The notes below the pieces were generated by a model. That model did no database searches. It was not told where the DNA came from and saw only the letters and a list, made by a program, of their open reading frames with translations. A program made the translations under genes and the position numbers. A stretch of 64,000 nucleotides of DNA, from IMG/VR virus record IMGVR_UViG_3300005337_000441, positions 124,001-188,000 of that record. One strand, given 5' to 3'. Below, piece by piece: positions 3,123 to 18,790 of this stretch (position 1 is the stretch's first letter; every line of letters begins with the position of its first letter).

Positions 3123-5159
3123 ATGCTCAAACTCCATGTGCGGGACCTCGTCCCGCTGGATCCGCAAGAAGTGGCAACCCGGCTGCTTCACGAGGAGGAG
3201 ATCTACCTCACCTTTGATGACGGTGAGGAGATCAAAACCAACGGGCGTCGGACGTTCTACTCGTCGTATGCGTGGGAGTTTCATCGGCAGTACCCCGGGG
3301 TGCCGCTGACGAAGTCCCACCATGTCGACTTTGTGCTGGGTGGCAAGCCACTCAACGCGTCCACGCACATCCAGCTGCTGGAGAACATCAGCAAGGATGT
3401 GATCTTTGTGCACCAGCTGTTCTTGCCGGAGCAAAAGGAAAACGTTCTCTCGCTGATCTATTCGGCCACGAACCGCATCCACAACGAAGTCACGCAGTTC
3501 GCCGAAGGGCACGTGACAACGATCGACCTGTTGGACTTCATCGAAGTCGTGGATCATCCTGCCATCAAGGCGGCGATTGCAGAGCTGCCCAAGAACGTCC
3601 ATTCCAAGGACCCGGCCATCTCTCGCGTCTACGACAACGTCCTGAAGATCATCCAAACCCATGCGGACTTCGCCCAGAACAATCTGGCGCGGGCTGTGCG
3701 GGCCAAGATCGTCAACAACAACCAGGTCTTGCAGTGCGTGGCGTTCCGGGGTTTCCCCTCGGAAGTGGACGGCAAAGTGCTCAACGAGCCGATCCTGTCG
3801 AACTTCACGGTCGGCAACGTTCGGCTCTACGACTACGTGGCTGAGTCCCGTTCGGCGGCAAAGTCGCACTACTTTGCTGAAGCACCGCTGGAAAAGGCCG
3901 AGTACTTCTCACGCCGACTGCAGTTGCTCACGATGGTGATCGAGCGGATCCATTACAAGGATTGCGGTTCGCAGCGCTACGTGAACTGGATCATGCGTCC
4001 GCCCGAGCTCGACGACACGGGCAAGGTCTTGTACCCTGGTGACCTGAAGTTCATGGTCGGCAAGTACTACTTGGGTGAGGACGACACGACGCTCAAGGAG
4101 ATCAAGGGCGACGAGACGTACCTCTACAACAAGATGATCCGCATGCGCTCGGTGCTCATGTGCGAAGATCCGGACCCGCATGCAATCTGCTCCACGTGCT
4201 TTGGCGCTCTCTCGCAGAACGTCAGCAAGTATGTGAACATCGGTCACCTCTGCGCGGCCACGATGACCCAGCAGACCTCGCAGTCGGTGCTCTCGACCAA
4301 GCACTTGGACTCCTCCAGTCGCTCCACCGACATCGTCTTGAACGAGTTCACGAGCCGCTACTTCACAACCACGCCCTCCAAGAGTGCCTACCTGGTGCGC
4401 AAGGAGTTCCGCAACAAGGACGTCAAGTTCATCATCAACCGAGACCAAGCAGTCGGTCTCGCAGACGTGATGGCCCTGGAAAACCTGGACAGCCTCTCGC
4501 TCACCCGCATCAGCTCGATCGCCGAGATCGACTTCCAGTTCACGGAGAAGGACGGTGGAGAAATTCACACCATCCCCGTGCGTCTGGAGCAGGACAAGCG
4601 CAAGGCCGTCTTCACGATGGAGTTCCTGAAGCACCTCAAGCGCAACCGCTGGCAGACCGACAACCGCGGCAATTTCGTGTTCGACCTGAAGGACTGGAAC
4701 TTCAACGTTCCGCCCCTGATGCTCCCGGACATGGAGTACAGCTTCTCGGATCACTCCGAGGAGATCGCCTCGATGATCGAGTCCTCGGTGGAAAACATCA
4801 CCGAGCGCTCCAAGCCCAACTCTCCCGCAACGACCTTGCAGGAGCTTTTCGCCAAGGTCAACGGCAAGCTGAGCGTTAACGTCGCGTTGCTTGAAGTGAT
4901 TCTGGCCGCGGTGATGATCCCTGAGCAAGGTTCCTACGGAATCGGGCGCGGGAATCCCAACGCGGTGCTGGGCGTGGCAGGGCAACTCATTAAGAATCGG
5001 TCGCTGTCCAATGCGTACGCGTTCCAAGATCAGCTGGAAACCATTCTCGCTCCGAAGAACTTCTTCGTCGAGGGTCGTCCCGACTCGGTCTTTGACGTGT
5101 TCATCGCCCCGGACCTGGTCGTGGCTTACCAAGAGCAGCGCAAGCAGCTGAAAAGTTAA
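3123..5159 (+). CDS. rpoC: Non-virion RNA polymerase beta' subunit, C-terminal part (phiKZ gp74-like)
   Basis: Zn-site DCGS...RSVLMC...ICSTCFG and trigger-loop-like GHLCAATMTQQTSQSVLSTKH. Confidence 0.9.
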   Translation: MLKLHVRDLVPLDPQEVATRLLHEEEIYLTFDDGEEIKTNGRRTFYSSYAWEFHRQYPGVPLTKSHHVDFVLGGKPLNASTHIQLLENISKDVIFVHQLFLPEQKENVLSLIYSATNRIHNEVTQFAEGHVTTIDLLDFIEVVDHPAIKAAIAELPKNVHSKDPAISRVYDNVLKIIQTHADFAQNNLARAVRAKIVNNNQVLQCVAFRGFPSEVDGKVLNEPILSNFTVGNVRLYDYVAESRSAAKSHYFAEAPLEKAEYFSRRLQLLTMVIERIHYKDCGSQRYVNWIMRPPELDDTGKVLYPGDLKFMVGKYYLGEDDTTLKEIKGDETYLYNKMIRMRSVLMCEDPDPHAICSTCFGALSQNVSKYVNIGHLCAATMTQQTSQSVLSTKHLDSSSRSTDIVLNEFTSRYFTTTPSKSAYLVRKEFRNKDVKFIINRDQAVGLADVMALENLDSLSLTRISSIAEIDFQFTEKDGGEIHTIPVRLEQDKRKAVFTMEFLKHLKRNRWQTDNRGNFVFDLKDWNFNVPPLMLPDMEYSFSDHSEEIASMIESSVENITERSKPNSPATTLQELFAKVNGKLSVNVALLEVILAAVMIPEQGSYGIGRGNPNAVLGVAGQLIKNRSLSNAYAFQDQLETILAPKNFFVEGRPDSVFDVFIAPDLVVAYQEQRKQLKS

Positions 5160-7292: not shown

Positions 7293-7934
7293 GTGACCGA
7301 AAGTGATTCCGTTCAAGAAGATTTCAGCAACCCCAACAACGTCGTGCAGCAACATGGTTACGCCCTGCACGTCATGATGGGGATGACGCGACGCTACTTC
7401 AGTGCGCTTCTCCAACTCAATGAGTCCACGGACTTCAAGGATCCTGCCACCATCATGTTCATGGAGCGCATGGGTGGGATCGATCACATCTACTCGTTCA
7501 TCCGCATTGCCGAGCAGATCGATCTGGACAAGTTCTACCCTGATCTGATCGAGAAGGTGCGGGCTCTCATCAAGAAGCTCCAAGAGCAAGGCATCGTGCA
7601 GAACAAAGCAGCTCCGGCTGCGGACTTCTTCATGACGCCGGGCAAGACTCATATCGAAGACTGGGCACACGAATGTCACTACAACGACGCGGACAACGTC
7701 CGCTACGCGAAGTGGTGGTTTGTTCAGGTCGGCATGCCGGCCACGATGGCCCTGTACTTTGCCAAGGTGATGAAGCCGTTTCACCTGTATACGACTTACC
7801 AAGGCAAGCGTTTTCGCGTGACCGGATGCTCTCGCCTGGGAGATGTGTGGTTGCGGGCCGATCACAGCAAGGCCGAAGGCTACGACCATCGCATCTATGT
7901 CGACGACTGCTCAGATTGGAGTGACACCCCATGA
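7293..7934 (+). CDS. Hypothetical protein, two-domain; C-terminal RVTGCSRLGDVWL domain
   Basis: AAGGAG RBS then GTG; coding-like codon bias. Confidence 0.75.
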   Translation: MTESDSVQEDFSNPNNVVQQHGYALHVMMGMTRRYFSALLQLNESTDFKDPATIMFMERMGGIDHIYSFIRIAEQIDLDKFYPDLIEKVRALIKKLQEQGIVQNKAAPAADFFMTPGKTHIEDWAHECHYNDADNVRYAKWWFVQVGMPATMALYFAKVMKPFHLYTTYQGKRFRVTGCSRLGDVWLRADHSKAEGYDHRIYVDDCSDWSDTP

Positions 7935-8473
7935 TCCATTCCAGTATGTTGCTGCTGCTCATGAACGGTTGCCAGATCCGCTGTGAGCCCATTGTCGTGC
8001 ACGGCAGTGTTTTGCATCGCGGCATGACGCTGGAGTATCGGTTCACCAAGGAGACGTTTGATCACCTGATCGATCGTCCCAAGGAGATGAGTTTCTTCAT
8101 CGCGGAGAAGCTCTCGGACAAGATTCTGCCGATGCTTGAAGTCTGCCAGCAGTCCAGGATCGTTGATCGTCCCGAGCGTGTGGATCAATCCGTGGCTCAA
8201 TTGAGCACCGCGATGCTCTCCGTCATCTCTGGGATCATCATCGATTACCGCAAGGTCATCAATGAGCTTGAGAGTTGTGTGACGGCTAACCAGGCATATT
8301 TCGGAAAGTTCTTGGTCCGAATGCCGGACCCCAACGCCGTTCACATGAGTCTCACGTTCCAACTCATCGTCAACAGTCACGAACTTCACATCAAAGGTGA
8401 ACTCTCAGCGCACGACGAAGCCGAGTACATCAGCTTCAACGTGATCAACGAACGCGTAGCAATTCGTTACTGA
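7931..8473 (+). CDS. Hypothetical protein
   Basis: ATGA overlap with upstream stop; ends at terminator. Confidence 0.7.
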   Translation: MIHSSMLLLLMNGCQIRCEPIVVHGSVLHRGMTLEYRFTKETFDHLIDRPKEMSFFIAEKLSDKILPMLEVCQQSRIVDRPERVDQSVAQLSTAMLSVISGIIIDYRKVINELESCVTANQAYFGKFLVRMPDPNAVHMSLTFQLIVNSHELHIKGELSAHDEAEYISFNVINERVAIRY

Positions 8474-8491: not shown

Positions 8492-8526
8492 CCCCCAGGA
8501 GACTCCTTCACGGGAGCTCCTGGGGG
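8492..8526. terminator. Bidirectional hairpin terminator
   Basis: CCCCCAGGAG...CTCCTGGGGG stem between convergent genes. Confidence 0.8.
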
Positions 8527-8567: not shown

Positions 8568-9059
8568 TCAAGAAGGCTTACCTTGCGCCGCAGCACCCAG
8601 TGCTTTCTCAATGTCGCGGATGTCATTGCCCTTCTTGGTGATCCATCGCTCTGCTTTCTCGAACATCATTGCGACGATGTCAGTAGGCAGTTCCAGAAAT
8701 TCCACGAAGGTGAGTCCGAAGTACTCACGGACGTTGAGTTGATGGTAGCGGTCCATCAAGTCATCCAGCCTTGAGTCCTGGTTGATGTCCTCCGCATCGT
8801 GGAACGCCACAGATGCCAAAGGGCGGTAACCTTGGGGACTCAAATGGTTGTAGATGCCAAACCGGGTCTCAAAGAGATCCTGCATGGCAATTTTCATGTC
8901 GACAGACTCATCGACTTTCGGCAGTCTACCCAGCGACTCAGAAACGAAGTCATCCCCGTCGATGTAAGCAAGTCTATCTTGCTCCCATGCGAAGCGGATG
9001 TCTCCGATTCTTATCGTGTCGCGATTCTTTCGAGTCTCTGGGTAATCAATCCGAAAAAA
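8568..9059 (-). CDS. Tail/baseplate assembly chaperone-like C-terminal ORF (T4 gp51 / lambda gpT-like); reached by -1 frameshift or from ATG 8897
   Basis: LDDLMDRYHQLNVREYFGLTFVEFLELP resembles gp51/gpT-type helical chaperones; overlaps the upstream ORF across a slippery site. Confidence 0.6.
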   Translation of the reverse strand, partial: FFRIDYPETRKNRDTIRIGDIRFAWEQDRLAYIDGDDFVSESLGRLPKVDESVDMKIAMQDLFETRFGIYNHLSPQGYRPLASVAFHDAEDINQDSRLDDLMDRYHQLNVREYFGLTFVEFLELPTDIVAMMFEKAERWITKKGNDIRDIEKALGAAAQGKPS

Positions 9060-10561
9060 ACTTGTGCCACATCCAGAGGAATGATGTTCGTGTGATGCGG
9101 GAACTTGTCGTTGCCGGTGTGGTCGGTGCCGCACTGCGGACACTTGAACACCGGGATACCGATCACGCTCGTCGTGGAGGTGGAGATGTAGTTCACGACT
9201 TCCAGCAGGAAGCGGTCACGGATCTCGTCGTCGGCGGTGAGCAGAGCGAGCATCTCGTCGACCGACTCGCGGTCATCGGTGATGTTGCCCTGGAATTCGA
9301 TCGACTCGATCCAGTGTGCGTACTGGCGCAGCGCCGAAGCCTGGCCTTGCAGCGTGATGGTGTTGTTGCGTTCGTTGGTCGACGCATCGATGCCGAGTGC
9401 ACGGTCGACGTTCTCGACGATGCCATTGATCCACTGGTGACCAGAGGAGATGTACTCGGTGATCGAGGGCGAACGCAGCGTGAAGGACACTTCATTCTGC
9501 TTGCCTTCGTTGACCGTGATGCGCTTGTGCTGCAGGCGAGCGAGCTCTTCCTTGTAGCGCTTGATCTCGGCCAGCGTCTTGAGCTTGGGCTGGCGCGAAG
9601 ACATGTGCGTCTTCTGCCATTCCGTCAGCGTCTTCATGTTGGTCCACTGAAGCTTCATGACGTTCAGCGTTTCCTTGAGCACGAAGTTGCACTTCTCGGG
9701 ATTGCTGATGCAGGCACGCTCGTAGAGGAAGCCGCGCGGATACATCGTGCAGACGAAACCCCACAGCAGGCTCGGAATGTCCTGGCAGACCACATGGTCA
9801 CGCAGGTTTTCCTTGTTGACGTCTTCGGTCTTGGTCGTCAGGTTGTAGACGTGGTCCAGAGCGAAGTCGACCAGGCGGTCGATGGTGAACGCCGTCATGT
9901 TGGAGTACATGAGGCCGTAGGAGGAGCGACCGAACTTGATCTTGTCGGCCATCATCGAGCGGTTGAGCTCGACGATCTCGGCTTCTGTGGGCGGCTTGAA
10001 CGTCACCCAGATGCCCGAATGCCACAGAGGCGCCTGAAACACCGTGCCGTGACCCAGGTGAGAGACCAGACGCAGCAGGGCGCGCTCACCCTTGATGTTC
10101 TGACCTTGGACTTCCTGGAACTGCGGCACCGAGCCGATCAGCGGACGACCACTGACTTGGTTGTTCTGGCGGAATTCGGAATCGGGCTCGGACATGGCAG
10201 CCACCAGAACTTCGTTCATGGTGTTGTAGTCCATGCCTTCACCCAGCACAGCCGACCAGCGACGAGCGTCAGGACTGTCGGTGAGCTTGATGTTGGGCGT
10301 GTGATCGATCGCTCGCACGGCCTTGCTGTCCAGGTCGCTGGGCAGGGCAAGTTGTTCGCCGCTGTCGCGCATCTCGGGCATGTTGACCGAGAAGTCCTGG
10401 ATGGCGTTGGTCTCGGCCACGACGACGACAGGTTCAGCAGCAGCCGGAGGCGGCACTTCACCGGACGGCGCAGGAGCAGCGTCAGGCGTCTCGTCCAGGA
10501 TCAGCGGAGGAACTTCTTCACCGGGCGGAGCCTTGTTCAGGGAGGGGTCTTCAGTGCTCAT
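9011..10561 (-). CDS. Putative baseplate hub assembly / tail assembly chaperone (T4 gp26-like), Zn-finger motifs
   Basis: VTFKPPT, DIPSLLWGFVCTMYPRG..RAC....C, FKCPQCG; acidic Pro-rich N-terminus. Confidence 0.6.
   Translation of the reverse strand: MSTEDPSLNKAPPGEEVPPLILDETPDAAPAPSGEVPPPAAAEPVVVVAETNAIQDFSVNMPEMRDSGEQLALPSDLDSKAVRAIDHTPNIKLTDSPDARRWSAVLGEGMDYNTMNEVLVAAMSEPDSEFRQNNQVSGRPLIGSVPQFQEVQGQNIKGERALLRLVSHLGHGTVFQAPLWHSGIWVTFKPPTEAEIVELNRSMMADKIKFGRSSYGLMYSNMTAFTIDRLVDFALDHVYNLTTKTEDVNKENLRDHVVCQDIPSLLWGFVCTMYPRGFLYERACISNPEKCNFVLKETLNVMKLQWTNMKTLTEWQKTHMSSRQPKLKTLAEIKRYKEELARLQHKRITVNEGKQNEVSFTLRSPSITEYISSGHQWINGIVENVDRALGIDASTNERNNTITLQGQASALRQYAHWIESIEFQGNITDDRESVDEMLALLTADDEIRDRFLLEVVNYISTSTTSVIGIPVFKCPQCGTDHTGNDKFPHHTNIIPLDVAQVFFGLITQRLERIATR
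9053..9059 (-). promoter_or_regulatory. Candidate -1 ribosomal frameshift heptamer T TTT TTC
   Basis: Codons GTT TTT TTC in frame of 9011-10561; the -1 frame AGT TTT TTT CGG is the open 8568 frame. Confidence 0.65.
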
Positions 10562-17432: not shown

Positions 17433-17467
17433 GCCACCTCCCTCACCGGAGGTGGCTCTTTTTTTTT
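17433..17467 (+). terminator. Intrinsic terminator
   Basis: GCCACCTCC-CTCACC-GGAGGTGGC followed by TCTTTTTTTTT. Confidence 0.85.
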
Positions 17468-18740: not shown

Positions 18741-18790
18741 CATCCCAGGGAGCCCGAAAGCTCCCTGGGATGATGTGCTGTTTTTTTTTT
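18741..18790. terminator. Bidirectional terminator
   Basis: CATCCCAGGGAGC-CCGAAA-GCTCCCTGGGATG, T10 run on +. Confidence 0.9.

What the first reader, a model, noticed from the sequence alone, without database searches (positions are those of the whole stretch)
8568..10561. Candidate programmed -1 ribosomal frameshift joining two tail/baseplate chaperone-like ORFs
Seen: the 516-aa minus ORF reads GTT TTT TTC GGA at 9061-9050, a canonical X XXY YYZ heptamer (T TTT TTC, 9059-9053) in the correct phase 14 codons before its stop. The -1 frame (AGT TTT TTT CGG...) stays open to 8568. The downstream ORF has no well-supported own start near the junction (next ATG at 8897, weak RBS). The codons after the site abruptly become rare for this genome (GGA TTG AGA AGA CGA), as expected under dual coding, and TTT is otherwise uncommon here. 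Established: lambda G/GT-type tail chaperones use such frameshifts. Inference: a 516-aa and an about 664-aa product; I am not aware of this being described for phiKZ-like phages. No strong stimulatory structure was visible downstream.
Basis: partly seen in the sequence, partly recalled or inferred. Interest (0 to 1): 0.8.

Follow-up and report, generated by a model that had tools for sequence, protein, structure and literature searches.

The report
Conserved −1 frameshift in jumbo-phage hub gene
A run of T's near the end of a baseplate-hub-like gene lets a fraction of ribosomes slip back one base and add a 161-residue domain, and the same unannotated signal is present in every phiKZ-like jumbo phage examined, including phiKZ, Goslar and SPN3US.

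Summary
The 516-aa minus-strand ORF (10561..9011) carries GTT TTT TTC, an in-phase T TTT TTC at 9059-9053. The −1 frame runs open to the stop at 8570-8568, giving a 664-aa fusion.

On the window alone this is weak, but comparison settles it. In 91 of 92 homologous loci the downstream ORF is in the −1 frame, open for 150-192 codons. These loci span GC 26-59% and include phiKZ gp77/gp76.4, 201phi2-1, Goslar, SPN3US, RAY and PCH45. The exception is RTH11, whose run is one T short.

Among 51 clusters at ≤60% identity:
- The P-site Phe codon is TTT in 49/49 (20.5 expected).
- The preceding codon ends in T in 42/51 (15 expected), although its amino acid varies.
- 42/51 carry a canonical T TTT TTN.

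A conserved H[VI]x4FG motif lies beyond the 0-frame stop. About three quarters of loci have no possible start codon before it. Substitutions there fall on −1-frame third positions (253/167/622).

No stimulatory structure or SD-like element is conserved, as in lambda G/GT and P2 E/E+E'. By fold and C-terminal motif the upstream protein resembles T4 gp26.

I found no annotation or paper describing this. It is a new, family-wide case of a known mechanism. No trans-frame protein has been observed.

The parts
9011..10561 (-). Upstream ORF, 516 aa plus TAA. It belongs to phrog_4585, is the homolog of phiKZ gp77 and has a T4 gp26-like fold. This is the 0-frame product.
9053..9059 (-). Slippery heptamer T TTT TTC, read in the 0 frame as GT[T TTT TTC]. 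The T-run itself spans 9060-9054. It encodes F502-F503 in the last helix of the protein.
9011..9052 (-). Dual-coding overlap. The 0 frame encodes GLITQRLERIATR and the stop; the −1 frame encodes the start of the extension, (R)IDYPETRKNRDTI....
8568..9053 (-). −1-frame extension, 161 aa plus TGA, in phrog_12109. Residues 1-33 form a poorly ordered linker and residues 35-156 a helical domain. The fusion product is 503+161 = 664 aa.
8988..9011 (-). The window's version (RIGDIRFA) of the conserved linker motif H[VI]x4FG, read in the −1 frame. It starts at the 0-frame stop codon and lies upstream of any start codon.
8895..8897 (-). First canonical start codon (ATG) in the −1 frame after the slip site. 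It has no SD-like sequence. Gene callers start the 109-aa 'gene' here, but family homology begins upstream of it.
8492..8526 (-). GC-rich hairpin 42 nt after the extension's stop, probably the transcript's 3' end. The region folds at −42.9 kcal/mol (z = −4.3). It failed the strict terminator scan because only 3 U follow.
   Evidence: In a phiKZ-like phage, RNA contigs end just after the equivalent stop.

Best explanation
This is a programmed −1 ribosomal frameshift.

Most ribosomes translating the gp26-like gene read GTT TTT TTC GGA... to the TAA and make the 516-aa protein. A minority, with tRNA-Phe on UUU (P site) and UUC (A site), slip back one base onto U UUU UU. They then read CGG AUU GAU... 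in the −1 frame for 161 more codons and make a 664-aa protein. This product shares residues 1-503 but swaps the last 13 residues of the terminal helix for a flexible linker carrying the H[VI]x4FG motif, followed by a helical domain of about 125 aa.

The site is a bare heptamer with no stimulator. Efficiency is therefore probably a few per cent, giving a fixed low ratio of long to short form from one mRNA.

By analogy with lambda G/GT and P2 E/E+E', the shared body would do the hub-assembly job and the rare extension would tether a second partner.

What is shown here:
- The slippery site is conserved at the nucleotide level.
- The downstream ORF keeps the −1 frame relation.
- The linker is under protein-coding constraint despite having no start codon.
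- The transcript is continuous in a phiKZ-like phage.

What is inferred:
- That the ribosome, rather than the polymerase, slips.
- The efficiency.
- The assembly role.
For: (1) Frame relation. In 91 of 92 homologous loci (GenBank isolates and IMG/VR contigs, GC 26-59%, upstream proteins down to about 20% identity) the downstream ORF is in the −1 frame. That frame is open for 150-192 codons from the run, while the +1 frame is mostly open for fewer than 20.

(2) Nucleotide-level selection. In 51 clusters at ≤60% identity the P-site Phe codon is TTT in 49/49 (20.5 expected from each gene's own usage; joint p 5e-26). The preceding codon ends in T in 42/51 (15 expected; 0 of 200,000 simulations reached this), while it encodes V, L, I, T, A, S, N, H, Y or G. 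Two lineages changed F to L but kept T TTT TTG / T TTT TTA.

(3) Translated linker. The motif H[VI]x4FG (H 67/85, F 80/85, G 65/85) lies 14-37 residues after the slip, beyond the 0-frame stop in all but the Centimanus/KpLz245/PCH45 clade, where it falls inside the longer overlap. In about 62 of 85 loci no ATG/GTG/TTG exists in that frame between the preceding stop and the motif.

(4) Coding signature. In 45 related pairs, differences in the linker fall 253/167/622 on −1-frame codon positions 1/2/3. The rest of the domain shows the same pattern, 1243/798/2358.

(5) Truncated gene calls. Gene callers start the downstream protein anywhere from profile position 1 to 53, with homology reaching their first residues. 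None of the top 150 of 1,842 family clusters is an in-frame fusion.

(6) Transcript. RNA-seq contigs from four runs of a phiKZ-like infection run unbroken across gp77, the 218-nt 'gap' and gp76.4, with the genomic 7 U's.

(7) Codon bias. GC3 is lower in the extension in 17/17 high-GC clusters, as expected for a rarely translated segment.

(8) Precedent. T TTT TTG without a stimulatory structure is the proven P2 E/E+E' site (PMC3091744).
Against: - No direct evidence of the trans-frame protein exists. No peptide, reporter or ribosome-profiling data could be examined.
- No stimulatory hairpin or pseudoknot is conserved (mean z −0.28 against −0.42 for control segments). There is no upstream SD-like element either (3/51 against 3.0 expected). 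This is usual for phage tail frameshifts.
- Nine of 51 clusters have imperfect sites: G TTT TTT, G TTT TTC, A TTT TTC, or only GTT TTT Nxx. These need single-tRNA slippage.
- The conserved FF dipeptide forces part of the T-run, so amino-acid conservation accounts for part of the run (though not for the TTT codon choice or the T before it).
- The RNA evidence is from assembled contigs, which hide minor length variants.
Confidence: 0.78

Rival explanations
1. Transcriptional slippage. The RNA polymerase (in these phages the phage-encoded one) stutters on the T-run and adds one U to a fraction of the mRNAs. Normal translation of those mRNAs then yields the same 664-aa fusion.
For: - The signal is a homopolymer, and selection for T at the position before the FF codons lengthens the run as well as completing the heptamer.
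- The RTH11 record has 7 T where its relatives have 8. That puts even the conserved C-terminus out of frame, which would be tolerable only if run length is read heterogeneously.
- The slippage behaviour of phiKZ-type polymerases is unknown.
Against: - Runs are 5-8 T (5:4, 6:10, 7:28, 8:9 clusters) and never 9 or more, the length at which bacterial polymerases slip efficiently (established knowledge).
- Clades with only 5 T (GAG TTT TTC, GTT TTT ATC) keep the whole arrangement.
- Consensus RNA contigs in four runs show exactly 7 U and no variant contig (weak evidence).
- RTH11 is more simply a homopolymer sequencing error.
Confidence: 0.12
2. There is no recoding. These are two ordinary genes, and the downstream one is translated on its own from ATG 8897 or from a non-canonical start or reinitiation. 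The T-run is only how a conserved Phe-Phe happens to be encoded.
For: - Every GenBank record examined annotates two separate genes, or leaves the second unannotated.
- In some loci a start codon with an SD-like sequence lies near the start of the domain (for example L024 and L070).
- A free-standing form could coexist with the fusion.
Against: - It does not explain TTT in 49/49 P-site codons or T at the preceding wobble position in high-GC genomes.
- It does not explain the universal −1 frame relation across gaps of 17-218 nt.
- It does not explain a conserved, codon-phased peptide motif upstream of any start codon in most loci.
Confidence: 0.07
3. Assembly or sequencing artefact, or a recently broken gene. 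On this reading a single long gene was split by a homopolymer error in this metagenomic contig.
For: The window is a metagenome-assembled contig (IMGVR_UViG_3300005337_000441), and the break lies at a homopolymer.
Against: - The same split, with a conserved 0-frame C-terminal tail (FFxLLxQ[RK]...) ending in a stop, is present in 91 other loci, including many independently sequenced isolates.
- phrog_4585 matches the 516-aa protein to within 2 residues of its end.
- No fused homolog appears among the top 150 family representatives.
Confidence: 0.01

Closest known systems
Phage P2 E / E+E' tail-assembly frameshift (−1 at T TTT TTG)
   Same: - Nearly the same slippery sequence: T TTT TTN, and two lineages here use exactly T TTT TTG / T TTT TTA.
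- The −1 direction.
- The site lies a few codons before the stop of the first ORF.
- No stimulatory RNA structure (PMC3091744).
- A myovirus morphogenesis gene yielding a short and a C-terminally extended product.
   Different: - P2 E is 91 aa and E+E' 142 aa, and they sit between the tube and tape-measure genes.
- Here the 0-frame product is 516 aa with an unrelated, gp26-like fold.
- The locus lies between a helicase gene and virion-RNA-polymerase genes.
- There is no sequence or significant fold similarity to GpE or tail-chaperone families (one weak Atlas lead at 0.86).
Lambda G / GT tail assembly chaperone frameshift and its counterparts in long-tailed phages (Xu, Hendrix and Duda 2004)
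   Same: - Conserved −1 frameshift near the 3' end.
- Fixed low ratio of long to short form.
- No obligatory stimulator.
- The products are probably absent from virions: the phiKZ gp77 record carries no structural note, unlike its neighbours gp79-81.
- The mechanism is described in PMC5009743.
   Different: - The slippery sequence differs (lambda uses G GGA AAG; from memory).
- The gene family, size and genomic position differ.
- No tape-measure gene is adjacent.
- The partners of the extension are unknown.
T4 gp26 baseplate hub protein (Pfam PF12322)
   Same: - Fold similarity to 'T4-like baseplate hub assembly proteins' in BFVD: E 1e-5 to 6e-4, target-normalised TM 0.46-0.57.
- A shared C-terminal motif...(V/I)P.xCPxCG...FFxLL. 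T4 gp26 ends ...VPIKCPECGKTHAHVIRGLKEFFELL*.
   Different: - T4 gp26 is 208 aa.
- It encodes FF as TTC TTT, stops three codons later and has no −1 extension; gene 25 follows.
- None of 37 family members matches PF12322 by sequence.
- T4's known second product, gp26', comes from an internal in-frame start, not from recoding (annotation).
Transcriptional-slippage genes (long A/T runs, e.g. Thermus dnaX and some IS elements)
   Same: A homopolymer at the junction of two frames yields a C-terminally different protein.
   Different: The runs here are 5-8 nt, phase-locked to the codons, and never reach 9 or more. The consensus RNA equals the DNA.

Membership tests
Programmed −1 ribosomal frameshift (X XXY YYZ type) | Slippery heptamer in the correct phase of the upstream ORF | tested here: met
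   T TTT TTC at 9059-9053 is read as GT[T TTT TTC]. Canonical T TTT TTN occurs in 42 of 51 clusters.
Programmed −1 ribosomal frameshift (X XXY YYZ type) | An overlapping −1 ORF, open from the site, that lacks its own initiation signal | tested here: met
   The −1 frame is open for 161 codons. The first start codon is 52 codons downstream (residue 53 of the extension) and has no SD. About 62 of 85 relatives have no start codon before the conserved linker motif.
Programmed −1 ribosomal frameshift (X XXY YYZ type) | Conservation of the site and the frame relation among diverged homologs, with synonymous-site constraint | tested here: met
   91 of 92 loci are in the −1 frame. TTT in 49/49 P-site codons (20.5 expected) and X=T in 42/51 (15 expected).
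Programmed −1 ribosomal frameshift (X XXY YYZ type) | The trans-frame region evolves as protein-coding sequence | tested here: met
   Substitutions fall 253/167/622 on codon positions 1/2/3 of the −1 frame in the start-less linker. The H[VI]x4FG motif is conserved there.
Programmed −1 ribosomal frameshift (X XXY YYZ type) | A stimulatory element: a downstream structure or an upstream SD-like sequence (common, not obligatory) | tested here: not met
   Downstream folding z −0.28 against −0.42 for controls. SD-like motifs in 3/51 against 3.0 expected.
Programmed −1 ribosomal frameshift (X XXY YYZ type) | Detection of the trans-frame polypeptide, or measured frameshifting | not testable with these tools
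   Only RNA contigs were available. Proteomic supplements list phiKZ gp77 but not the extension.
Tail assembly chaperone pair (lambda G/GT, P2 E/E+E') | Located between the major tail/tube gene and the tape-measure gene | tested here: not met
   The neighbours are a helicase, small ORFs, and gp78-, gp79- and virion RNAP β-like genes. The synteny is the same as in phiKZ gp75-gp80.
Tail assembly chaperone pair (lambda G/GT, P2 E/E+E') | Sequence or fold membership of a known chaperone family | tested here: not met
   No Pfam, NCBIfam or PHROG chaperone hit. BFVD chaperone hits reach only E≈0.8. The Atlas GpE lead scores 0.86, below the useful range.
Tail assembly chaperone pair (lambda G/GT, P2 E/E+E') | A −1 frameshift near the 3' end giving a short and an extended product | tested here: met
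   See the rows above. The products are 516 and 664 aa.
T4 gp26 baseplate hub family (PF12322) | Match to the family profile | tested here: not met
   0 of 37 members match any Pfam family at E≤0.01, whereas T4 gp26 itself scores 215 bits.
T4 gp26 baseplate hub family (PF12322) | Shared fold and C-terminal CPxCG...FFxLL motif | tested here: inconclusive
   Foldseek E 1e-5 to 6e-4 to T4-like hub assembly proteins, covering only part of the 516-aa model (TMq about 0.3, TMt 0.46-0.57). hhalign to T4 gp26 gives probability 24% over 26 columns. The motif is visible by eye.
Transcriptional slippage site | A long homopolymer (typically 9 or more) and mRNA heterogeneous in run length | tested here: inconclusive
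   Run length is 5-8, never 9 or more. Consensus RNA contigs show 7 U, but contigs hide rare variants.

The most novel reading that the evidence does not exclude
The gp77/gp76.4-type pair may be the long-missing functional counterpart of the G/GT tail-assembly chaperone in phiKZ-like (Chimalliviridae and allied) jumbo phages. On this reading it is built on a T4 gp26-like hub-assembly protein rather than on a canonical chaperone fold. The rare frameshift extension would link the hub-assembly factor to a second component (tape measure, tube initiator or hub) in a ratio essential for baseplate and tail assembly. A still more unusual variant is that the phage's own RNA polymerase, not the ribosome, generates the shift.
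Probability: 0.3. Interest if true: 0.75.

Novelty: new member of a known kind. Interest (0 to 1): 0.62.

Why it matters
- **Annotation.** The signal is in every relative examined, including phiKZ, 201phi2-1, Goslar, SPN3US, RAY and PCH45. Yet every GenBank record inspected either truncates the downstream ORF (phiKZ gp76.4 is annotated as 80 aa of a roughly 165-aa extension) or leaves about 500 nt unannotated. One rule, a join at the T-run, would correct a gene in more than 200 deposited jumbo-phage genomes and in a protein family of at least 1,800 clusters at 50% identity.
- **Biology.** The mechanism predicts a previously unconsidered protein of about 75 kDa made at a fixed low ratio. This gives an experimental handle on hub and baseplate assembly in nucleus-forming phages, about which little is known.
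- **Evolution.** It extends the rule that phage tail genes use −1 frameshifting to set protein ratios to a gene family unrelated to the classical chaperones. It also links that family to T4 gp26, which has the same C-terminal motif but no recoding.

Tried and rejected
- Near-identity DNA search of phage genomes with the locus found no match. The window is known only as an IMG/VR contig.
- A first attempt at search for related loci with 14 sequences failed because no block was conserved enough. A 5-sequence alignment worked.
- Pfam and NCBIfam gave nothing for either protein or for the neighbours.
- A PDB sequence search and Foldseek against the PDB for both models gave nothing. Neither part is in a solved structure.
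- The extension showed no relation to T4 gp26, gp51 or gp28, or to the upstream protein. The eye-catching match of the extension to T4 gp26 residues 41-78 has probability 1.5%, and I do not rely on it.
- I looked for a downstream stimulatory structure and an upstream SD-like element across 51-85 loci. Neither is enriched.
- I looked for in-frame fused homologs. There are none in the top 150 of 1,842 clusters.
- RNA reads were available only as assembled contigs, so they cannot measure minor U-run variants.
- Literature searches (phiKZ+frameshift; jumbo phage+programmed+frameshift+baseplate; Chimalliviridae/SPN3US terms; gp77/gp76.4 identifiers; the 2016 recoding review) found no description.
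- 'gp77' in the Goslar structure preprint and in the other papers that mention a gp77 refers to unrelated genes.
- The strict terminator scan found nothing, although a strong hairpin follows the extension.
- The long T-runs at 17459 and 18781 (+) were checked as possible further recoding sites. They are terminator tails.
Full report
**What is in the window**

On the minus strand an ATG-initiated ORF runs from 10561 to 9011 and encodes 516 aa. Fourteen codons before its TAA it reads GCA CAA GTT TTT TTC GGA. The heptamer T TTT TTC (9059-9053) is therefore in X XXY YYZ phase.

The −1 frame is open from above 9143 down to TGA at 8570-8568.

After the site, the first ATG/GTG/TTG in the −1 frame is ATG 8897, 52 codons downstream (residue 53 of the extension), with no Shine-Dalgarno-like sequence. 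Gene callers start the 'gene' at that codon.

The gene uses TTT once and TTC 15 times outside the site. GC drops from about 0.60 to 0.51 at the site.

Taken alone the heptamer is not strong evidence. The ORF has two in-phase heptamers against 0.31 expected after codon shuffling.

**What the two parts are**

- The 516-aa protein belongs to phrog_4585 and matches it to within two residues of its end. The 0-frame stop is therefore the family's normal end.
- The −1 part belongs to phrog_12109, a profile of 147 positions. The match begins eight residues upstream of ATG 8897 and at profile position 34, so relatives extend further towards the slip site.
- tblastn finds the upstream protein in 229 phage records, all jumbo phages, and the downstream part in 45.
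- In phiKZ the pair is PHIKZ077 and PHIKZ076.4.
- The neighbourhood is the same as phiKZ gp75-gp80: helicase, small ORFs, the pair, and gp78-like, gp79-like and virion RNA polymerase β-like genes.
- The window itself is IMG/VR contig IMGVR_UViG_3300005337_000441, 215,768 bp.

**Comparative test of the frameshift**

I collected 19 annotated isolate loci and 75 IMG/VR loci. For each I located the junction with a profile of the upstream protein.

Every locus has a T-run of 5-8 at the conserved x-F-F-(T/I)-L motif, 10-46 codons before the stop. This holds across genomic GC from 26 to 59% and upstream-protein identities down to about 20%. From that run the −1 frame is open for 150-192 codons, while the +1 frame is usually open for fewer than 20.

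The annotated downstream gene is in the −1 frame in every case, although the 'intergenic' gap varies from 17 to 218 nt. The one exception is the RTH11 record, discussed below.

Sites in well-studied phages:

| Phage | Site |
|---|---|
| phiKZ/PA7 | ACT TTT TTT |
| 201phi2-1 | ACT TTT TTT |
| Goslar | CTT TTT TTT |
| SPN3US | GTT TTT TTC |
| RAY | GTT TTT TTT |
| PCH45 | run of 7 T, starting at the third position of the preceding codon |

**Nucleotide-level selection**

I reduced the set to 51 clusters at ≤60% identity.

- The Phe codon in the P-site position is TTT in 49 of 49. Each gene's own Phe usage predicts 20.5, and the joint probability is 5e-26 if the clusters are treated as independent.
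- The codon before it ends in T in 42 of 51. Third-position T frequencies predict 15, and none of 200,000 simulations reached 42.
- That preceding codon encodes ten different amino acids, so the T is selected as a nucleotide.
- Two lineages replaced the second Phe by Leu yet kept T TTT TTG (pEa_SNUABM_54) and T TTT TTA (AgentSmith).

Heptamers across the 51 clusters:

| Heptamer | Clusters |
|---|---|
| T TTT TTT | 26 |
| T TTT TTC | 14 |
| T TTT TTG | 1 |
| T TTT TTA | 1 |
| Imperfect (G TTT TTT, G TTT TTC, A TTT TTC, or GTT TTT Nxx / CTT TTT Nxx) | 9 |

Every imperfect site still has a Phe codon preceded by T. Run length is 5 (4 clusters), 6 (10), 7 (28) or 8 (9), and never 9 or more.

**Is the stretch after the 0-frame stop translated?**

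The aligned −1-frame extensions share the motif H[VI]x4FG (H 67/85, V/I 77/85, F 80/85, G 65/85). It lies 14-37 residues after the slip and, outside the Centimanus/KpLz245/PCH45 clade, beyond the 0-frame stop. In the window it reads RIGDIRFA (9011-8988).

- In about 62 of 85 loci there is no ATG, GTG or TTG in that frame between the preceding −1-frame stop and the motif.
- In 45 pairs of related loci, differences in the segment between the 0-frame stop and the first possible start fall 253/167/622 on −1-frame codon positions 1/2/3. The rest of the domain shows the same signature, 1243/798/2358.

This stretch is protein-coding in the −1 frame, and in most genomes ribosomes can reach it only from the upstream ORF.

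A profile of the extension finds 1,842 clusters (at 50% identity) among 1.84 billion proteins. The top 150 are all 104-186 aa. Their called N-termini begin anywhere from profile position 1 to 53, with homology reaching the first residues, which is the mark of truncated gene calls. None is an in-frame fusion.

**RNA**

I laid contigs from four RNA-seq runs of a phiKZ-like infection on the PA7 locus. They run without a break through gp77, the 218-nt gap and gp76.4. They end just after the extension's stop and show the genomic seven U's with no indel.

These are assembled contigs. They show continuity but cannot reveal minor variants.

In the window a strong hairpin (8526-8492; the region folds at −42.9 kcal/mol, z −4.3) follows the extension's stop.

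**Stimulators**

- The 60 nt after the site fold no better than shuffled or control segments: mean z −0.28 against −0.42.
- SD-like motifs upstream occur in 3 of 51 clusters against 3.0 expected.

The site is therefore a bare heptamer. The same is reported for P2 E/E+E', which shifts −1 at TTTTTTG without a structure (PMC3091744). Lambda G/GT has a 30:1 product ratio (PMC5009743). I infer an efficiency of a few per cent.

In 17 of 17 high-GC clusters the extension has lower GC3 than the upstream gene (0.63 against 0.74).

**Ribosome or polymerase?**

An extra U added by the polymerase would give the same protein. Four points argue against it:
- The runs never reach 9 or more.
- Clades with only five T's keep the whole arrangement.
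- The sites are classical heptamers in phase.
- The consensus RNA matches the DNA.

The RTH11 record leaves it open. It has 7 T where its relatives L007, L046 and L049 have 8. The conserved C-terminus is then in −1 and the extension in −2/+1 relative to the upstream body, and the annotated 0-frame tail is unconserved. A homopolymer sequencing error is the simpler reading.

I give ribosomal −1 frameshifting 0.78 and transcriptional slippage 0.12.

**Function**

- The upstream model is confident: pLDDT 84, pTM 0.84. F502-F503 sit in the last helix, 498-515.
- The extension model has a disordered linker (1-33) and a helical domain (35-156) with pLDDT 80-98 in its last third.
- Neither matches any PDB structure.
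- Against BFVD, after its jumbo-phage homologs, the upstream model hits 'baseplate hub assembly protein, T4-like' entries at E 1e-5 to 6e-4 (target TM 0.46-0.57). It also hits Aeromonas phage 25 gp26 at E 0.097. Tail-chaperone entries appear only at E≈0.8.
- T4 gp26 ends ...VPIKCPECGKTHAHVIRGLKEFFELL*. This is the same CPxCG...FFxLL motif, but encoded TTC TTT and followed at once by a stop and gene 25.
- No family member matches Pfam PF12322 by sequence.
- The phiKZ record marks gp79-81 as structural but not gp77 or gp78. gp77 and gp78 are detected in infected cells (PMC10449902 supplement).

I therefore read the upstream protein as a distant, enlarged gp26-like hub-assembly factor. It is not a lambda-type chaperone. 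The locus is not between the tube and tape-measure genes, and neither its size nor its family fits. The partner of the extension is unknown.

**Novelty**

None of the roughly 24 annotated records inspected joins the two ORFs. Several phiKZ-like records leave about 510 nt unannotated, and phiKZ gp76.4 covers only the last 80 of about 165 extension residues.

Searches of the held literature, including the 2016 recoding review, found no description. The held library lacks many subscription papers, so prior mention elsewhere cannot be excluded.

The mechanism is a known kind. The gene family and its universality in these phages appear new.

Noticed in passing
L005 (Xanthomonas phage RTH11, OQ790161) 2318-2324: The T-run has 7 T where the close relatives L007, L046 and L049 have 8. 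The annotated 627-aa ORF therefore continues in an unconserved frame. The conserved C-terminus FFTLLGQRT...* is in −1 and the downstream protein in −2/+1. This is either a homopolymer sequencing error or a genuine variant that depends on slippage.
   Followed up: partly
L088 (phiKZ NC_004629) 4560-5063; L089-L091: phiKZ gp76.4 is annotated as 80 aa, although the −1 frame is open for about 165 codons from the gp77 T-run. Three phiKZ-like records (124.01, Wadjak 2, kmuB) leave the whole stretch of about 510 nt after gp77 unannotated.
   Followed up: yes
window 8492-8526 (minus strand): A GC-rich hairpin lies between the convergent extension ORF (ends 8568) and a plus-strand ORF (7931-8473). The surrounding 101 nt fold at −42.9 kcal/mol (z −4.3). 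It is probably a bidirectional terminator, missed by the consensus scan because only three U follow.
   Followed up: partly
L100 (T4 NC_000866) 7803-7870, minus strand: T4 gp26 ends KCPECGKTHAHVIRGLKEFFELL*, the same C-terminal motif as the jumbo-phage proteins. It is encoded TTC TTT, with no T-run and no −1 extension. The recoding therefore looks like an addition in the jumbo-phage lineage, or a loss in T4.
   Followed up: partly
L010, L011, L084-L086 (Klebsiella/Serratia phages) and L099 (PCH45): In this clade the slip site (GGT TTT TTT) lies 38-46 codons before the 0-frame stop instead of 10-23. The conserved linker motif therefore falls inside a long dual-coding overlap.
   Followed up: no
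window 9011-10561 versus 8568-9010, and the 17 high-GC relatives: Third-position GC is lower in the extension than in the upstream gene in every high-GC cluster (mean 0.63 against 0.74), and no different in low-GC clusters. This is consistent with relaxed codon selection on a rarely translated segment.
   Followed up: yes
window 17459-17467 and 18781-18790 (plus strand): These runs of T9 and T10 are the longest homopolymers in the window. Both follow GC-rich hairpins in intergenic DNA, so they are ordinary intrinsic-terminator tails, not recoding sites.
   Followed up: yes
phiKZ gp77 homolog in phage Churi (gp256): The Churi paper (PMC11849849) lists the gp77 homolog among 15 'early-expressed' hypothetical proteins tested for toxicity. 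Early expression would be unexpected for a baseplate-assembly factor.
   Followed up: no
L030 2387-4054: The profile match to the upstream protein in this IMG/VR contig crosses one in-frame stop codon near its N-terminal end. This may be a shorter true N-terminus or a sequence error.
   Followed up: no
window 9761-9767 (minus strand; nt 801-807 of the ORF): A second in-phase heptamer, G GGT TTC, lies in the middle of the 516-aa ORF. I did not check whether it is conserved or whether the −1 frame is open there.
   Followed up: no
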